Shown in pieces: positions 19,693 to 25,059 of a stretch of DNA of 64,000 nucleotides. Location of the stretch: positions 124,001-188,000 of IMG/VR virus record IMGVR_UViG_3300017917_003143, one strand, 5' to 3'. A program made the translations under genes and the position numbers. Below the pieces are notes generated by a model, which had not been told where the DNA came from, ran no database searches, and saw nothing but the letters and a program-made list of their open reading frames with translations. Within the stretch, counting starts at the first letter, position 1. Each line of letters opens with the position of its first letter.

Positions 19693-19760
19693 ACGAATAC
19701 CCAGTGTACCCCGAAGATGACGGTTCGGATCGTCCAAGAAATCCCTACAGCCCAGTATGA
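19689..19760 (+). CDS. 23 aa microprotein MNEYPVYPEDDGSDRPRNPYSPV
   Basis: ATGA overlaps at both ends. Confidence 0.55.
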   Translation: MNEYPVYPEDDGSDRPRNPYSPV

Positions 19761-20296
19761 GATTAAACGAGATACAACTAGGTCGTAGCGTAACCTACAA
19801 TTTCTACGATATCTACAAATTAGTACAACAACGACAAGGTCGCCCTGGCTTGACCATACGTCTGCGCGATGACCGTCCGGCAGAAACTCGCAAGAGTGGC
19901 ATCTATGTTTGGAAGCATCCTGACTGGGGTTACTTCTACGTGGGCATTGCCGCTGCCGACAACTTCACAGCACGTTGGCACAAGCACATACAAAAACTCC
20001 TGGATCAATGCACATCGGCCGCACAGATGCACAACTGGAAACAGTTTGCTGACCGGTTTGCCGCGGCTGGTTACGGCATCAATGATTTAAAAGATGTACA
20101 ACTGAGATTCTATCCCATTACCACTGTAGCACAACACGGCAACAAAGAATTGTTAAAACAAGAACTCAAAGCCATAGAGGATCGATTGACTGCTTGGCTC
20201 AACCCGGCATGCAACTATCAGCACGATCCTTCTCGACCCAGTGCTACTAAGTACCCACAACCAAGAAATGTTACACCTGACCAACAACAAGTTTAA
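19757..20296 (+). CDS. GIY-YIG family endonuclease
   Basis: SGIYVW...FYVG...RW..H. Confidence 0.75.
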   Translation: MRLNEIQLGRSVTYNFYDIYKLVQQRQGRPGLTIRLRDDRPAETRKSGIYVWKHPDWGYFYVGIAAADNFTARWHKHIQKLLDQCTSAAQMHNWKQFADRFAAAGYGINDLKDVQLRFYPITTVAQHGNKELLKQELKAIEDRLTAWLNPACNYQHDPSRPSATKYPQPRNVTPDQQQV

Positions 20297-20903
20297 CTCC
20301 GACGGATATTGGCATTCAGCAACAGATTCTATGTTGTTTATTCCGTTGGTTGAAGACTTTGCGCTGTTTGATCAGAATGGATTTGATCTCTGTCCATTGG
20401 AGAAAAGATTTGCCAATGCCAATCGCACACAATTCTTCAATCATAGAGAACACAGACATGCCATCAAAACACCTTGGTTCGAACAAGGTTATCGAATAGA
20501 AGGTGCTGTGTTGAATCACAGTTATCTATTTGAACGCAAAGGCTACACTGATCGGGCCCGCGAACAATTACTACAGTGGAGCCGGGAAATGCCCTTGTGC
20601 CACAAGCTCGTACAACTGCGACCCAAGTGGGGATTAGACTTTTCTATGGATTGGGTAGACCGTGCAGGCAATGCATTTGAAGTCCTGCACTGGGAATACG
20701 ATGGATTTGACTTTGAAGAAGTTGACGCTGTAAGGCAGTACATGGAAGAAAAGATAAAAAGCATAGACTGGCAACAGGCCGGACACGACATACTAAAGAA
20801 CAAAGACCAGTGGCATCATTTGGATTTCTTTGCGCAGAGTGATTGGAAGTGTGATTACTTTGGCGTACCCAAAGAAAGATTTAAAATGGTGGCGTGGGCA
20901 TGA
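20268..20903 (+). CDS. hypothetical protein
   Basis: ATG start within ORF 20241..20903. Confidence 0.7.
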   Translation: MLHLTNNKFNSDGYWHSATDSMLFIPLVEDFALFDQNGFDLCPLEKRFANANRTQFFNHREHRHAIKTPWFEQGYRIEGAVLNHSYLFERKGYTDRAREQLLQWSREMPLCHKLVQLRPKWGLDFSMDWVDRAGNAFEVLHWEYDGFDFEEVDAVRQYMEEKIKSIDWQQAGHDILKNKDQWHHLDFFAQSDWKCDYFGVPKERFKMVAWA

Positions 20904-20904
20904 A

Positions 20905-20985
20905 CACACCTTAGGACCGCTATGGTGCGTGGCCGGCTGCTGGCCTGACTGACGGATTCGCTACCCCTAGGTCAAAAGTGAGCAT
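20905..20985 (+). ncRNA. candidate structured RNA (three hairpins, two possible pseudoknots)
   Basis: GC-rich intergenic island with complementary segments (see findings). Confidence 0.4.
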
Positions 20986-20994
20986 AATTACTGG

Positions 20995-21999
20995 ATGCAA
21001 CAGATTATCAAATTTTCCAATCTCAAACCTGTTCCCAAACCCCACCTCAAAGGAAAATTTTGTCCTGTACCCTTTACTGATATTTCTGTAGATCCTGATG
21101 GAAATTTCACCATGTGCAAATGCCAACTGCACATGCCATTTGTAGTAGGCAACACCAAGTCGACTACTATAGAACAAGCATGGAATTCAGATCTTGCCAA
21201 TGCTGTGCGAGATTCTGTGTTGACCGGAACATTCGATTACTGTAGTTGGAAGTGCCCTGGGCTCAAGGAATTACAAGACAGCGTACCGCCCGGAGTAAAG
21301 TCGTCAGGCTATCCAAAATGGATCAACATCAGCAACGATCTTTCTTGCAATCTAAAATGTCCTAGCTGTAGAGAACAAGTGATCATCGAAAAAGATCCTG
21401 CGGTGCTGGAAAAACAAAATCGACTCATTGATCAGATAGTTGGATTCAAAGAACCAGTGATAGTCAATCCCTGCAACAACGGTGAACCCTTGGTCAGCCC
21501 GTCTACCATGTATCTACTGAAGAACATAGACCAGATGGATCTCAAGCACGTGAAGCTGTACCTATCTACCAATGGTACATTGATCTATCGATATCGAGAG
21601 TTGATAGAATCGATCAGCGATCGCATAGTAGGCTTTGGCATCAGTATCGATGCGGCCACGGAACAAACCTATCAAAAGGTAAGAGGAGACTTGTGGAACG
21701 ATCTGATGCAAGGCATACGATGGTTGGGTACGCTGAACAAACCATTGCATCTGACTGCACGATTTGTAGTGCAAGGAAAGAACTATCACGAAATGCGAGA
21801 TTTTGTGCTCATGGTCAAAGAATTAGGATTCAAGGACGTGCATTTCCAATTGATAAGAGATTGGGGCCATTGGTCCGATCAGTGGTGGAATGAAAATCGA
21901 TTGTCTTTGGAAGAAATGCGATGTGTACAGCAACAGTCTCAGGCCATGAAAGAAGAATTTGGCAATTTTATCACGTTCGATTCGGAGTTTTTGATCTAA
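20995..21999 (+). CDS. radical SAM protein with N-terminal SPASM/Twitch-like Cys cluster
   Basis: CNLKCPSC; GEPL; STNG; CPVPF..DG...C. Confidence 0.8.
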   Translation: MQQIIKFSNLKPVPKPHLKGKFCPVPFTDISVDPDGNFTMCKCQLHMPFVVGNTKSTTIEQAWNSDLANAVRDSVLTGTFDYCSWKCPGLKELQDSVPPGVKSSGYPKWINISNDLSCNLKCPSCREQVIIEKDPAVLEKQNRLIDQIVGFKEPVIVNPCNNGEPLVSPSTMYLLKNIDQMDLKHVKLYLSTNGTLIYRYRELIESISDRIVGFGISIDAATEQTYQKVRGDLWNDLMQGIRWLGTLNKPLHLTARFVVQGKNYHEMRDFVLMVKELGFKDVHFQLIRDWGHWSDQWWNENRLSLEEMRCVQQQSQAMKEEFGNFITFDSEFLI

Positions 22000-22034
22000 A
22001 TAGTGTTGCATATTATCAAAACATAGTGTACAAT
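21997..22034 (+). promoter_or_regulatory. late TAAATA plus sigma70-like TTGCAT-17-TACAAT for replication operon
   Basis: direct reading. Confidence 0.55.
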
Positions 22035-22059
22035 AATTAAACTTTACGGAGAGTATCAA

Positions 22060-22317
22060 ATGGACAAAACATTCAACAACGAACAAAAAATCAAACTCAC
22101 ACAGATCATCAATGAAGGCATGCAGGTCATGCACGAGATTGAAACACTCAACGGTGGACTTAATGATACCATCAAAGCCGTGGCAGAGGAAATGGAAATC
22201 AAGCCTTCGATCCTCAAGAAAGCCATCAAGCTGGCACACAAAGCAGAGTTTGGTCGTGAGCAACAGGATCATGCCTTGCTTGAAACAATTTTGACCACTG
22301 TTGGCAAAACTCTATAA
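22060..22317 (+). CDS. small DNA-binding protein, T4 DsbA/GapR-like
   Basis: 85 aa helical protein upstream of pol; SD GGAG. Confidence 0.5.
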   Translation: MDKTFNNEQKIKLTQIINEGMQVMHEIETLNGGLNDTIKAVAEEMEIKPSILKKAIKLAHKAEFGREQQDHALLETILTTVGKTL

Positions 22318-22398
22318 TTACTGTTATCTCAACAGCGTCTCGCCCACGTCACGGGCATGAAGAACGGTATGTGTGGGCCATAAGCCACCGGGAGAACA

Positions 22399-25059
22399 AT
22401 GAGTTACGTAGACGCACTATTTGATCGTGAACACGATCGCATACATGTAGTAGAACGCAAGAATGGTCTTCGCGAGTATCGCGAATATCCAGCAACTTAT
22501 GTGTTCTACTATGATGATCCTCGAGGCAAGTTCCGTAGTATCCACGGCAATCCTGTTTCGAGATTTTCCACCCGCAACAACAAAGAGTTCCGCAAAGAAC
22601 TACGCATCCAATCAGGTAAAGGTATCTATGAGTCAGATATCAACCCTGTGTTCCGGTGCTTTGAAGAAAACTACAAAGGACAGGACGCACCTCGACTGCA
22701 GACATGCTTCTTCGACATTGAGGTAGACTTTGATCCTGTGCGTGGATTCAGCCGCCCAGAAGATCCTTTCAACCCTATCACAGCTATTTCTGTGTATCTT
22801 GACTGGCTTGACCAACTCGTGACCTTGGTCATACCGCCCAAGTCAATGAGCCGAGAAACTGCCCAAGAGATCGCTGGCCAGTTTGAAAATACCATGATCT
22901 TTGATCGAGAAGAGGACATGCTCAACACATTCCTGGATCTCATCGATGACGCTGATGTGCTGTCGGGTTGGAACTCAGAGGGTTTCGATATTCCATATAC
23001 GGTACAACGTATCACTCGTGTGCTGAGCAAGGATGACACACGGCGCATGTGTTTGTGGAATCAGTTTCCCAAGCAAAGAACTTTTGAACGTTTTGGTGCA
23101 GAGAACTTGACCTTTGATTTGATTGGTCGGGTACACATGGACTATATGCAACTTTATAGGAAGTACACATATGAAGAACGACACAGTTACTCGCTGGATG
23201 CCATCGGCGATCATGAGCTTGGAGAGAGAAAAACTCAGTTTGAGGGAACGCTTGATCAGTTATACAATCAAAACTTCAAGACGTTCATCGACTACAACCG
23301 GCAGGACACCATGTTGCTTGCCCGCTTGGACAAAAAGTTACGATTTTTAGATCTTGCCAATGAACTGGCACATGCCAATACTGTGTTGTTGCAGACCACC
23401 ATGGGTGCTGTGGCAGTGACAGAGCAGGCCATCATCAATGAAGCCCACGAACGTGGCTTGGTAGTTCCCAACCGTAAAGAGAGACTCACAGATGAAGACA
23501 CGCAAGCCGCAGGTGCCTATGTTGCTTATCCCAAAAAAGGCATCCACGAATGGGTCGGTGCCATTGACATCAACTCGCTGTATCCCTCGGCTATTAGAGC
23601 CCTCAACATGGCTCCAGAAACAATCATTGGACAACTCCGTCCAACAATGACTGATAGGTACATCCGAGAGAAAATGAACTCTGGTGCCAGCTTCGCGGCC
23701 GCCTGGGAAGGTTTGTTTGGTAGCCTTGAGTACACAGCCGTGATGGAACAACAGCGTGGCACAGAGATCACTATAGACTGGCAAGATGGAGAAGAGACTG
23801 TACATTCTGCTCCTGAAGTTTGGAAGATGATATTTGATAGCAATCAACCTTGGATCCTATCAGCCAATGGCACGATATTCACATTTGAAAAAGAAGGTGT
23901 GATCCCTGGCTTGCTGGCACGTTGGTATAGAGAGCGCAAAGAGCTACAGGCCAAACTTAAAGAAGCTACCAGCAAGGCCGACCAGGAGTTCTGGGACAAG
24001 CGACAACTGGTCAAGAAGATTAACTTGAACTCATTGTATGGCGCTATTCTTAATCCTGGCTGCCGCTTTTTTGATAAGCGCATTGGACAGTCAACTACGC
24101 TAACTGGTCGTGCCATTGCATATCACATGGATGCCTATGTCAACGAGTGTATCACTGGCAAATATGATCATGTAGGCGAAGCTATCATCTATGGTGACAC
24201 AGACTCTGTGTACTTCAGTGCTTGGCCAGTGTTGGCCAAAGAAGTCAAAGAAGGCCGCATGGAATGGTCAAAAGAGATGTGCGTACAACTCTACGACAAC
24301 ATAGCTGATCAGGTCAATGACAGTTTTCCTGGCTTCATGGAGCGAGCGTTCCATTGTCCTAGAGAGATGGGTTCTATCATCAAGGGCGGTCGTGAACTGG
24401 TAGCAGATCGCAGTCTGTTTATCACCAAGAAGCGTTACGCTGTCAACATCTATGACAAAGAAGGCAAGCGCAAGGACACCGAAGGCAAGACTGGTTCGAT
24501 CAAGGCCATGGGCTTGGACTTGAAACGCAGTGATACACCCAAGGTCATCCAAGACTTCTTGTGGGACTTGCTGGAACGTGTGCTAAATGGTAGCCAGAAG
24601 GACGAGATTGTAGAACGCATCCGTGAATTCAAGTATGAGTTCAAGGAGCGACCAGGTTGGGAGAAAGGTAGTCCCAAGCGTGTAAACAACTTGACTACCT
24701 ATCAGAAGAAAGAAGAACGTGAAGGACGTGCCAACATGCCAGGGCATGTGCGAGCCGCACTGAACTGGAACAACATGCGTCGCATGAACAGCGATAACTA
24801 TTCATTGCAGATTGTTGATGGTATGAAGACCATTGTGTGTAAGTTAAAGTCTAATGCGTTAGGATGGACATCAATTGGTTATCCCACTGACGAAATGCAT
24901 CTTCCGCAATGGTTCAAAGACTTGCCGTTTGACGATGCAGAAATGGAAGCCACTGTAGTAGATCAGAAGATCGACAACTTGTTGGGTGTGCTGGGTTGGG
25001 ATCTGCAATCAGCAACGAATACCACTAACACTTTCCAATCTCTATTTGATTTCGAATGA
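22399..25059 (+). CDS. polB: family B DNA polymerase (T4 gp43-like)
   Basis: FDIE, GWNSEGFDIPY, YNRQD, DINSLYPS, KINLNSLYG, YGDTDS. Confidence 0.97.
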   Translation: MSYVDALFDREHDRIHVVERKNGLREYREYPATYVFYYDDPRGKFRSIHGNPVSRFSTRNNKEFRKELRIQSGKGIYESDINPVFRCFEENYKGQDAPRLQTCFFDIEVDFDPVRGFSRPEDPFNPITAISVYLDWLDQLVTLVIPPKSMSRETAQEIAGQFENTMIFDREEDMLNTFLDLIDDADVLSGWNSEGFDIPYTVQRITRVLSKDDTRRMCLWNQFPKQRTFERFGAENLTFDLIGRVHMDYMQLYRKYTYEERHSYSLDAIGDHELGERKTQFEGTLDQLYNQNFKTFIDYNRQDTMLLARLDKKLRFLDLANELAHANTVLLQTTMGAVAVTEQAIINEAHERGLVVPNRKERLTDEDTQAAGAYVAYPKKGIHEWVGAIDINSLYPSAIRALNMAPETIIGQLRPTMTDRYIREKMNSGASFAAAWEGLFGSLEYTAVMEQQRGTEITIDWQDGEETVHSAPEVWKMIFDSNQPWILSANGTIFTFEKEGVIPGLLARWYRERKELQAKLKEATSKADQEFWDKRQLVKKINLNSLYGAILNPGCRFFDKRIGQSTTLTGRAIAYHMDAYVNECITGKYDHVGEAIIYGDTDSVYFSAWPVLAKEVKEGRMEWSKEMCVQLYDNIADQVNDSFPGFMERAFHCPREMGSIIKGGRELVADRSLFITKKRYAVNIYDKEGKRKDTEGKTGSIKAMGLDLKRSDTPKVIQDFLWDLLERVLNGSQKDEIVERIREFKYEFKERPGWEKGSPKRVNNLTTYQKKEEREGRANMPGHVRAALNWNNMRRMNSDNYSLQIVDGMKTIVCKLKSNALGWTSIGYPTDEMHLPQWFKDLPFDDAEMEATVVDQKIDNLLGVLGWDLQSATNTTNTFQSLFDFE

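What the first reader, a model, noticed from the sequence alone, without database searches (positions are those of the whole stretch)
20905..20985. Compact, multiply paired intergenic RNA upstream of a radical SAM gene
Seen: stems CACC 20907-10/GGTG 20924-27; GGCC 20931-34/GGCC 20942-45 (loop GGCTGCT); TGAC 20946-49/GTCA 20971-74. Cross-pairings are TAGG 20912-15/CCTA 20966-69 and TTCGCT 20957-62/AGTGAG 20977-82. A GC-rich spacer of about 90 nt is unusual in a genome of overlapping genes. I do not recognise the family. Inference: a new riboswitch, ribozyme or sRNA.
Basis: partly seen in the sequence, partly recalled or inferred. Interest (0 to 1): 0.65.

Follow-up and report, generated by a model that had tools for sequence, protein, structure and literature searches.

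The report
New pseudoknotted RNA in jumbo phages
The 91-base spacer holds a real, strongly conserved folded RNA that matches no catalogued family and occurs once per genome in a large group of uncultured giant phages, but it does not behave like a switch for the radical SAM gene next to it.

Summary
The three local stems are at the stated coordinates, and comparison across relatives confirms them. The window's own fold energy is unremarkable (z -0.8). At least 120 IMG/VR contigs carry the same element, with invariant blocks (CCUUAGGACC, GGCUGCU, AUUCGCUAC, AAGUGAGCA) between stems that covary heavily.

The 3' tail pairs with the P2 loop, not the P3 loop. The fold is a P1 hairpin plus an H-type pseudoknot (P2 and the loop-tail helix) with P3 in its third loop.

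No Rfam family matches. The element is absent from cultured relatives and from cellular genomes.

There is one intact copy per genome, on the gene strand, starting just after an upstream stop codon. A promoter or terminator signal usually follows within about 30 nt. At least 28 gene families lie upstream and 29 downstream. It usually sits 0.05-5 kb upstream of a DsbA-like/PolB module. In one complete genome the intact copy lies beside the terminase gene and the copy near PolB is decaying.

Best reading: a stand-alone non-coding RNA acting through its invariant loops, partner unknown. A radical-SAM riboswitch is not supported, although radical SAM genes are enriched just downstream. A new RNA family is near certain; its mechanism is open.

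The parts
20904..20985 (+). The whole conserved RNA element as matched by the covariance model. The model hit is 20899-20985 and includes the TGA stop of the upstream ORF at 20901-20903.
   Evidence: Model R1 scores 85.3 bits, E 2.4e-19. 89/89 bases are identical in L002-L005 and 81/81 in L007.
20904..20930 (+). P1 hairpin: ACACACC 20904-10 pairs with GGTGCGT 20924-30 (one A.C mismatch at 20906/20928). The loop carries the invariant block.
   Evidence: Seen in the sequence and in the MFE fold. Partner-swap test z -8.8. P1 sequences differ between relatives (ACUCG/CGAGU, CACAC/GUGUG, AUUUGG/CCGAAU).
20909..20918 (+). L1 block CCTTAGGACC, nearly invariant and mostly unpaired. Many relatives carry an extra hairpin (P1a) inserted after it; the window does not.
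   Evidence: Kept in the model-found divergent members and in most of the protein-selected sample.
20931..20945 (+). P2 hairpin: GGCC 20931-34 / GGCC 20942-45, loop GGCTGCT 20935-41.
   Evidence: All four stem pairs show double compensatory changes and 100% of cells are paired in A3. Also supported.
20936..20941 (+). 5' strand of the pseudoknot (GCTGCT, inside the P2 loop).
   Evidence: Pairs with AGT-G-AGC at 20977-83. RNAduplex picks this register. Compensatory variants are listed.
20946..20974 (+). P3 hairpin: outer TGAC(T) 20946-50 / (G)GTCA 20970-74; inner GG 20954-55 / CC 20965-66; loop ATTCGCTAC 20956-64.
   Evidence: Outer and inner pairs covary. The closing G-C becomes A-U in L252. 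A second subtype has a different tip, GGGAGUCGUGCCCC.
20975..20985 (+). Conserved 3' tail AAAGTGAGCAT. AGTGAGC 20977-83 is the 3' strand of the pseudoknot, with G20980 bulged.
   Evidence: Nearly invariant although the collection scan did not require it. It covaries with the P2 loop.
20983..20990 (+). CATAATTA box directly after the tail, resembling the ATAAATA gene-start motif (T4-late-promoter-like). The radical SAM ATG follows at 20995. This is not part of the RNA fold.
   Evidence: ATAAATA lies within 30 nt of ORF starts in 16 of its 42 genome occurrences, 5 of them 5-8 nt from the ATG. A late-type box sits 0-3 nt after the tail in 36 of 147 contexts. That the box is a promoter is an inference.
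20241..20903 (+). Upstream ORF (about 200 aa from 20301; no Pfam, PHROG or NCBIfam name). Its stop abuts P1.
20995..21999 (+). Downstream radical SAM gene with an N-terminal SPASM/twitch domain. It is an accessory gene inserted between the element and the DsbA-like/PolB module.
   Evidence: Pfam SPASM and Radical_SAM. NCBIfam N_Twi_rSAM is the best match, below its cut-off.
22060..22317 (+). DsbA-like 85-aa double-stranded-DNA-binding protein, the recurring downstream landmark (104 of 137 loci).
22399..25059 (+). Family B DNA polymerase, the second landmark gene of the module.

Best explanation
The spacer encodes a member of a previously uncatalogued family of structured RNAs, about 80-105 nt long. 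The family is confined to an uncultured clade of giant phages of the T4 superfamily, roughly 260-355 kb in size.

The fold:
- a P1 hairpin that displays the nearly invariant CCUUAGGACC, with or without an inserted hairpin P1a;
- an H-type pseudoknot made of P2 and a helix between the P2 loop (GCUGCU) and the 3' tail (AGU-G-AGC);
- the P3 hairpin in the pseudoknot's third loop, with loop AUUCGCUAC or a second subtype.

It is read on the gene strand. No promoter of its own was found, so it is most likely made as the 3' part of the transcript of whatever gene lies upstream. It probably ends, or is cut, just after the pseudoknot.

Each genome keeps one intact copy and its neighbours are interchangeable. 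I therefore read it as a stand-alone non-coding RNA that acts through its invariant loops by binding a protein or RNA partner still to be found. I do not read it as a leader that controls the radical SAM gene.

Shown: the family, the fold, the copy number and the contexts.
Inferred: the transcript ends and action in trans.
Unknown: the partner.
For: Family and fold:
- At least 120 viral contigs hold it, giving 113 distinct sequences.
- P2 and P3 covary.
- In 75 loci chosen through the DsbA-like protein, 58 hold it. 93.8% of cells pair against 69.9% in shuffles, 0 of 500 shuffles reach that, and slid controls give 30-48%.
- The P1 partner-swap test gives z -8.8.

Pseudoknot:
- GGGUGCU goes with GUGACC in L215, L226 and L239.
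- Whole-helix swaps occur: CUCCCUG/CAGGGAG (L189), CCCCCA/UGGGGG (L176), UCCCC/GGGGA (L237), and GCCC..ACU/AGU..GGGC (L194, L196).

Strand: G.U pairs far outnumber A.C (about 178 to 10, or 65 to 10 without the invariant pair). The + strand is therefore the folded one.

Constraint: the element is 89/89 identical where the adjoining gene is 78.7% identical and only 58% at third codon positions.

Copy number: one strong hit in each of 5 large records, two of them complete genomes.

Independence from neighbours:
- At least 28 upstream and 29 downstream gene families.
- In G002 the intact copy lies between an endonuclease gene and TerL, 189 kb from PolB. The copy beside PolB is degenerate (36 bits, no P1) and precedes a truncated ORF.

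3' boundary: a promoter-like box, U-tract or hairpin terminator follows within about 30 nt (40 nt for a few late boxes) in at least 108 of 147 contexts. All four wholesale-swapped pseudoknot types are followed by U-runs.

No sigma-70 promoter lies within 160 nt upstream in any of 121 instances.
Against: - No transcript data exist. The only sequencing run that holds the locus is DNA from a pond metagenome. Expression, RNA ends and stability are therefore all inferred.
- No partner was found. Complements of the conserved loops are not enriched in the phage's own genome.
- Radical SAM genes are enriched in the first position downstream: 18 of 126 loci from 4 clusters, against 2 of 123 upstream. 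The degenerate second copy in G002 also precedes a SPASM ORF. Some cis link to downstream cassettes is therefore not excluded.
- Most copies keep the same landmark position upstream of DsbA-like/PolB. That could reflect a cis role at that boundary.
- A few lineages lack the element at that position.
Confidence: 0.42

Rival explanations
1. It is a transcript-boundary element that acts in cis. The pseudoknot forms the 3' end of the upstream transcription unit by termination, by protection against 3' exonucleases or by processing. It insulates the following promoter and module from read-through.
For: - The element starts 3-20 nt after an upstream stop in 94 of 146 instances.
- The tail is followed by a sigma-70 promoter (-35 at about +9), a late-type box at 0-3 nt, a U-tract, or a textbook terminator at +10.
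- Variants with a G+C-rich loop-tail helix are each followed by a U-run, like a terminator stem.
- It marks the edge between a variable accessory region and the DsbA-like/PolB module.
Against: - A terminator or stabiliser needs neither about 30 invariant loop bases nor a P1 hairpin.
- Only about a quarter of contexts have a U-tract.
- The window itself has none: the tail runs straight into CATAATTACTGGATG.
- Ordinary hairpin terminators exist in these phages and are sometimes placed after the element, so the element does not replace them.
Confidence: 0.2
2. It is a cis-regulatory leader, meaning a riboswitch, a protein-binding operator or an attenuator. It controls the accessory gene directly downstream, here the radical SAM gene, through formation of the pseudoknot next to the start site.
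For: - An ATG follows within about 10-30 nt in roughly half of the loci.
- Radical SAM genes from four unrelated clusters, a ferritin/Dps-like gene and a desaturase recur in the first downstream position.
- The second copy in G002 also precedes a SPASM ORF.
- The many invariant unpaired bases and the optional stems are typical of aptamers.
- Two P3-tip subtypes could reflect changed specificity; this is an inference.
Against: - At least 29 unrelated downstream families.
- In 23 of 58 protein-selected loci the element is followed only by the promoter and SD of the DsbA-like gene.
- Terminators at +10 in 4 loci, with no covarying antiterminator.
- The box between the tail and the ATG resembles a genome-wide gene-start motif. 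That motif sits so close to the ATG that late transcripts would begin at or near the start codon and would not contain the element.
- The GAG of the tail is 12-15 nt from the ATG, too far for a good SD.
- In G002 the intact copy precedes the terminase gene.
Confidence: 0.15
3. It is a self-cleaving ribozyme of a new class that cuts polycistronic phage transcripts between genes.
For: - It is compact, with a conserved unpaired core, an optional inserted stem (P1a), a pseudoknot, and an intergenic, co-directional position in phage genomes.
- The layout of a hairpin loop pairing with a strand 3' of a second hairpin recalls the pistol ribozyme. This comparison is from memory.
Against: - No hit to any ribozyme model in Rfam, even at E up to 10 locally.
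- No obvious cleavage-site dinucleotide context.
- Nothing here tests catalysis.
Confidence: 0.1
4. It is a DNA-level element, such as a replication origin, a recombination hot spot or a homing-endonuclease target. Its hairpins would form in single-stranded DNA, or its sequence identity would be kept by gene conversion.
For: - Single copy, usually beside replication genes.
- A/T-rich sequence follows it.
- Many different genes are swapped in directly after it.
- GIY-YIG endonuclease genes lie nearby in 26 loci.
- 100% identity in otherwise diverged contexts.
Against: - The strong excess of G.U over A.C, including an invariant G.U, and a covarying pseudoknot point to RNA.
- Compensatory evolution over the whole family cannot come from gene conversion.
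- In G002 the intact copy is far from the replication genes.
Confidence: 0.05

Closest known systems
Pistol self-cleaving ribozyme (Rfam RF02679). Architecture recalled from the literature, not tested beyond the Rfam scan.
   Same: A small RNA found in phage and metagenome sequence. A hairpin loop forms a pseudoknot of about 6 bp with a strand that lies 3' of an intervening hairpin.
   Different: No Rfam match. Here there is an extra 5' hairpin with an invariant 10-nt loop. There is no conserved AAA linker, no G-U cleavage context and no conserved hairpin after the pseudoknot. Cleavage was not tested.
H-type pseudoknot riboswitch aptamers (SAM-II/SAM-V, preQ1-II/III, fluoride)
   Same: An H-type pseudoknot whose 3' strand lies next to expression signals. 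Many invariant unpaired bases between covarying stems.
   Different: No Rfam match. No consistent downstream gene class. Promoters usually lie between the element and the next gene. One copy per genome regardless of neighbours.
T4 gene 32 mRNA pseudoknot and T4 gp43 operator (translational operators of T4-type replication genes; from the literature, cf. PMC10690425 section 2.6)
   Same: T4-superfamily phage. A pseudoknotted RNA in the replication-gene region, followed by A/U-rich sequence.
   Different: It is not upstream of gene 32 and not directly upstream of PolB. PolB has its own separate conserved leader. It is larger and has invariant loops. Whole genes are often inserted between it and the module.
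PeSL (promoter-early stem-loop) cassettes of T4-type phages, described as mediating modular gene shuffling (recalled from the literature; not retrieved here)
   Same: A conserved intergenic stem-loop followed by an early sigma-70 promoter, at the edges of variable regions where accessory genes are exchanged.
   Different: PeSLs occur in many copies per genome and are simple stem-loops. This element is single-copy and is a complex pseudoknot with invariant loops and family-wide compensatory evolution.
Small processed phage RNAs such as the c4/CI antisense RNAs of P1 and P4 (Rfam C4) and the T4 stable RNAs C and D (from the literature)
   Same: Phage-encoded RNAs of about 80-140 nt without promoters of their own, released from longer transcripts, with conserved loops used for recognition.
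   Different: No sequence or model similarity. No complementary target sites were found in the phage genome.

Membership tests
Any Rfam 15 family | Score at or above the family's gathering threshold | tested here: not met
   0 matches in the whole window. Around the locus at E up to 10, only a chance 13.9-bit microRNA hit. Across 8 diverse family members at E up to 1, only a terminator hairpin hit.
Riboswitch | Conserved, covarying aptamer-like fold with invariant unpaired bases | tested here: met
Riboswitch | Consistent position in the 5' leader of genes of one pathway or function | tested here: not met
   At least 29 downstream families. Promoter-like signals lie between the element and the next gene. 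In G002 the intact copy precedes the terminase gene. There is partial enrichment of radical SAM genes.
Riboswitch | Expression platform with mutually exclusive pairing (terminator/antiterminator or SD sequestration) | tested here: inconclusive
   The 3' strand of the pseudoknot abuts U-tracts in about a quarter of contexts. No covarying alternative helix was found. The tail GAG lies 12-15 nt from the ATG.
Riboswitch | Specific ligand binding | not testable with these tools
   Needs in-line probing, ITC or SHAPE.
Self-cleaving ribozyme | Match to a known ribozyme class | tested here: not met
Self-cleaving ribozyme | Site-specific self-scission | not testable with these tools
   Needs an in vitro transcription and cleavage assay.
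Intrinsic terminator | G+C-rich stem directly followed by a U-tract | tested here: not met
   The window has no U-tract after the tail and no terminator call at the site. The feature is met in some relatives only: 37 of 147 contexts and the swapped-helix variants.
Stand-alone small RNA gene | Conservation and copy number independent of the flanking genes | tested here: met
Stand-alone small RNA gene | Own promoter, or defined processing sites, and a discrete transcript | tested here: inconclusive
   No sigma-70 promoter within 160 nt upstream in 0 of 121 instances. No RNA data are available. Processing from read-through transcripts is an inference.
tRNA / tmRNA | Cloverleaf or tRNA-like domain detected by ARAGORN | tested here: not met
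   No tRNA or tmRNA in the window.

The most novel reading that the evidence does not exclude
The element is the founding member of a new functional RNA class: either a new self-cleaving ribozyme or a new ligand- or protein-sensing pseudoknot. It would be carried as a single essential copy by a large clade of uncultured giant phages. Its two P3-tip subtypes would reflect two specificities.
Probability: 0.22. Interest if true: 0.85.

Novelty: new member of a known kind. Interest (0 to 1): 0.66.

Why it matters
Giant phages are known almost entirely from their protein genes. This is a compact RNA with about 30 nearly invariant bases and a covariation-proven pseudoknot. It is kept as one intact copy per genome across hundreds of environmental phage contigs and is absent from Rfam, from cultured phages and from cells.

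RNAs with this signature have often turned out to be ribozymes, riboswitches or parts of ribonucleoprotein machines. The element is short enough for direct biochemical tests. It also marks a site where these phages swap accessory genes such as radical SAM enzymes and ferritin-like proteins, which makes it a useful landmark for studying how their genomes are remodelled.

Tried and rejected
1. Fold energy of the single sequence is not significant on either strand.
2. The Rfam scans found nothing.
3. BLAST of the locus and of the element against cultured phages found no real match. The covariance model found no real match (only chance-level hits, E > 1) in the complete records of Phosso, Atu_ph07 and Vibrio phage 2.275.O.
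4. A full-text literature search for the conserved blocks returned only chance matches to primers and the like. The 2023 IMG/VR survey of candidate structured RNAs could not be checked because its supplements are not held.
5. Antisense targets in the phage's own genome: complements of L1, L2, L3 and the tail are not enriched. The apparent excess of ATGCTCACT is internal Met-Leu-Thr codons.
6. RNA evidence: no RNA run holds the locus.
8. An antiterminator between the P2 3' strand and the downstream terminator fits L008, L027 and L034 but does not covary in L082.
9. MAFFT did not align the P1 5' strand in one register. P1 was therefore tested with a partner-swap script instead of a column count.
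10. The shared block between the P3 tip and the PolB leader, GA(G/U)UCG(C/U)U, is only 5-9 nt in common. That is within what chance could give for most pairs, so it is kept only as a lead.
11. The loose pattern in cellular genomes gave 5 hits. Two are phage contigs binned in MAGs and the rest are chance.

Full report
**1. The observation**

The spacer between the TGA at 20901-20903 and the ATG at 20995 is 91 nt long. On its own the sequence is not special. The minimum free energy is -27.8 kcal/mol, against -25.4 +/- 3.0 for shuffles (z -0.80). The opposite strand gives z -0.44. Rfam 15 has no match in the window at gathering thresholds. Around the locus at E up to 10 there is only a chance microRNA hit. 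The spacer is the most GC-rich (56%) of 104 non-coding gaps of at least 70 nt in the genome, whose median is 43%.

**2. Where it comes from**

The window is bases 124001-188000 of a 343.6-kb IMG/VR virus record estimated 99% complete. The only sequencing run that holds it is DNA from a pond metagenome. Its family B DNA polymerase is 42-50% identical to those of Sinorhizobium phage Phosso, Agrobacterium phage Atu_ph07, XaC1, CBB and GAP32. The phage therefore belongs among the giant relatives of T4.

**3. Homologues**

- Relatives were fetched through the two flanking proteins. In four loci the spacer is 89/89 identical although the radical SAM protein is 84% identical and the upstream gene is different.
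- In another locus it is 81/81 identical behind the same upstream gene, but with a different gene downstream.
- At the DNA level the adjoining genes are 79-81% identical, and only 58-62% at third codon positions. The non-shared flanks are unrelated.
- More distant loci hold a shorter version at other positions.
It hit none of 185,579 cellular genomes.
- A looser pattern gave five cellular hits. The model confirms two of them. Both are phage contigs binned with Bacteroidota MAGs, and both carry the same DsbA-like and PolB genes downstream.
- The model finds no real match in the complete records of three cultured relatives, only chance-level hits at E above 1.

**4. Structure**

113 distinct sequences were aligned as A1.

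*P2 and P3.* RNAalifold recovers both, with double compensatory changes in 36-57 sequences per pair. MAFFT mixed the registers of the P1 5' strand, so all three helices were also tested by swapping partners between sequences. Own partners are far more complementary than swapped ones: z -8.8 for P1, -14.4 for P2 and -22 for P3.

*An independent sample.* The pattern scan forces three blocks to be invariant, so I drew a second sample through the neighbouring 87-aa protein (A2).
- The model finds the element in 58 of 75 loci, always on the gene strand and always upstream of that gene.
- Thirteen of the 17 misses have less than 2.6 kb of upstream sequence.
- A few lineages truly lack the element at that position, and one carries a very divergent version.

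*The pseudoknot.* The second sample revealed that the P2 loop and the 3' tail covary.
- The canonical pairing is G[GCUGCU] with [AGU]G[AGC].
- GGGUGCU goes with GUGACC in three sequences.
- Whole helices are swapped in L189 (CUCCCUG/CAGGGAG), L176 (CCCCCA/UGGGGG), L237 (UCCCC/GGGGA) and L194/L196.
- With the pseudoknot written in, 93.8% of cells pair, against 69.9% in shuffles (0 of 500 reach it) and 30-48% when the partners are slid.

*Strand.* G.U pairs outnumber A.C by about 178 to 10, so the + strand is the folded one.

*Subtypes.* A second subtype replaces the P3 tip GGAUUCGCUACC with GGGAGUCGUGCCCC..GGAAU and keeps everything else.

*In window coordinates:*

| Feature | Coordinates |
|---|---|
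| P1 | 20904-10 / 20924-30 |
| L1 block | 20909-18 |
| P2 | 20931-34 / 20942-45 |
| Pseudoknot | 20936-41 with 20977-83 |
| P3 outer stem | 20946-50 / 20970-74 |
| P3 inner stem | 20954-55 / 20965-66 |
| Tail | 20975-85 |

**5. Context**

- *Upstream edge.* The element is co-directional with its neighbours. A long upstream ORF stops 3-20 nt before the CCUUAGG block in 94 of 146 instances, using TAA, TAG or TGA.
- *Variety of neighbours.* At least 28 different families lie immediately upstream and 29 immediately downstream.
- *Constant landmark.* The landmark is an 87-aa DsbA-like DNA-binding protein followed by PolB. In the independent sample, 23 loci have the element 54-76 nt before that gene. 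The rest have 0.13-5.4 kb of inserted genes between.
- *Signals after the tail.* In 147 distinct contexts the counts are: a late-type box at 0-3 nt in 36; a U-tract in 31, plus 6 that also have a sigma-70 promoter; 32 sigma-70 promoters in all, including those 6 (-35 at about +9); a textbook hairpin terminator at +10 in 4; a late box further on in 5; other in 39.
- *The ATAAATA box.* It is a genome-wide gene-start motif. 16 of its 42 occurrences lie within 30 nt of ORF starts, and 5 of these are 5-8 nt from the ATG. The box in the window (CATAATTA, 20983-90) is therefore best read as the radical SAM gene's own start signal. That is an inference.
- *No own promoter found.* No sigma-70 promoter lies within 160 nt upstream of the element in any of 121 instances.

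**6. Copy number and position**

Each of five large records has one strong hit. In four of them it lies 1-3 kb upstream of the DsbA-like gene and PolB. G002 is a complete genome with terminal repeats, and there the picture differs. The intact copy lies 189 kb away, between a non-specific endonuclease gene and the T4-type large terminase gene. The copy beside PolB scores only 36 bits, has lost P1, and precedes a truncated SPASM-only ORF. One intact copy is kept and its position can change.

**7. What it most likely is**

That this is a real, new structured RNA family is close to certain (about 0.95). How it works is not shown. The rough odds are:

| Reading | Odds | Main reason |
|---|---|---|
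| Stand-alone non-coding RNA, made from read-through of the upstream gene, ending just after the pseudoknot, acting through its invariant loops | 0.42 | One intact copy per genome and interchangeable neighbours |
| Cis-acting transcript-boundary element | 0.20 | Explains the signals at its 3' edge, but not the invariant loops or P1 |
| Leader, riboswitch or operator for the downstream cassette | 0.15 | Kept alive by the radical SAM enrichment (18 of 126 downstream against 2 of 123 upstream); opposed by the variety of neighbours, the intervening start signals and the terminase context |
| New self-cleaving ribozyme | 0.10 | Not testable here |
| DNA-level element | 0.05 | Unlikely given G.U usage and pseudoknot covariation |

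**8. Known relatives**

There are none by sequence or model. The nearest by topology are the pistol ribozyme and the H-type pseudoknot aptamers. The nearest by biology are the T4 gene 32 and gp43 operators, the PeSL cassettes of T4-type phages, and small processed phage RNAs. None of their defining features that could be tested here was met. I could not check whether the unnamed candidates of the 2023 IMG/VR survey include this motif.

**9. Limits**

- There are no RNA data.
- The host is unknown.
- Invariance of three blocks in A1 is partly forced by the search pattern; A3 is the fairer sample.
- The counts are not phylogenetically independent.
- The promoter readings rest on consensus matches.

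Noticed in passing
window 22318-22398 (between the DsbA-like gene and PolB); alignment A4: This is a second conserved structured region, the PolB leader. It is the second most GC-rich spacer in the genome. It has a variable first hairpin, a conserved CGAGUC, a covarying hairpin (GCUC/GCCC/GUUC with a loop such as ACGUCAC), and a covarying hairpin CCGG-CCAYAAA-CGG whose 3' strand runs into the GGAG Shine-Dalgarno of PolB. It looks like a translational operator, as known for T4 gp43.
   Followed up: partly
element P3 tip (window 20954-20966) compared with PolB leader columns 27-39 of A4: The P3 tip (GAUUCGCUACC, or GAGUCGUGCC in subtype B) and the PolB leader (GA[G/U/A]UCG[C/U]U...) share a block of 5-9 nt, and both are followed by GAGCAU. 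This might mean a common binding protein, but the match is short enough to be chance.
   Followed up: partly
window 20995-21999: The radical SAM enzyme has its SPASM/twitch domain at the N-terminus (residues 23-88), ahead of the radical SAM core (118-271). The best NCBIfam match is 'N_Twi_rSAM', well below its cut-off. Its substrate is unknown.
   Followed up: partly
window 19757-20296: A free-standing GIY-YIG homing-endonuclease-like ORF lies about 600 nt upstream of the element. Homologues lie within 3 kb upstream of the element in 26 loci, and immediately upstream in 7.
   Followed up: partly
whole genome G000; e.g. window 20983-20990: ATAAATA behaves like a T4-type late promoter: 16 of its 42 occurrences lie within 30 nt upstream of ORF starts. 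The spacing falls into two classes. At 16-21 nt there is room for an SD. At only 5-8 nt the late mRNAs would be leaderless or nearly so.
   Followed up: partly
immediately 3' of the element in all loci (window 20986-22059): This is a hot spot for gene insertion. At least 29 unrelated families occupy the slot between the element and the DsbA-like gene. They include four radical SAM clusters, a ferritin/Dps-like protein, a fatty-acid desaturase, an SGNH-like hydrolase and an FNR-like reductase. Iron and redox enzymes are notably frequent.
   Followed up: partly
L163 1500-2053 (G002:76941-77493): A degenerate second copy of the element (36 bits, P1 lost) is followed by a 154-aa ORF that keeps only the SPASM domain. 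It appears to be a decaying element-plus-radical-SAM cassette, left beside PolB after an intact copy became established next to the terminase gene.
   Followed up: yes
L252 (Haliscomenobacter MAG contig, 183 kb) and L249 (Lishizhenia MAG contig, 14.5 kb): Phage contigs carrying the element, the DsbA-like gene and PolB are binned in two Bacteroidota MAGs. This is a weak hint at the host phylum. It sits oddly with the sigma-70-type promoters and GGAG ribosome sites seen in these phages.
   Followed up: partly
window 20301-20903 and loci L006-L037: The upstream 200-aa protein has no Pfam, PHROG or NCBIfam name, yet it is conserved (43-90% identity) in at least 32 viral contigs, usually within 1 kb of the element.
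   Followed up: no
L243 5832-5908: A very divergent version of the element (12 bits) has L1 as CCUUAGGAUCC, a long P2 loop and a different tail. It suggests the family is wider than the current model can detect.
   Followed up: no
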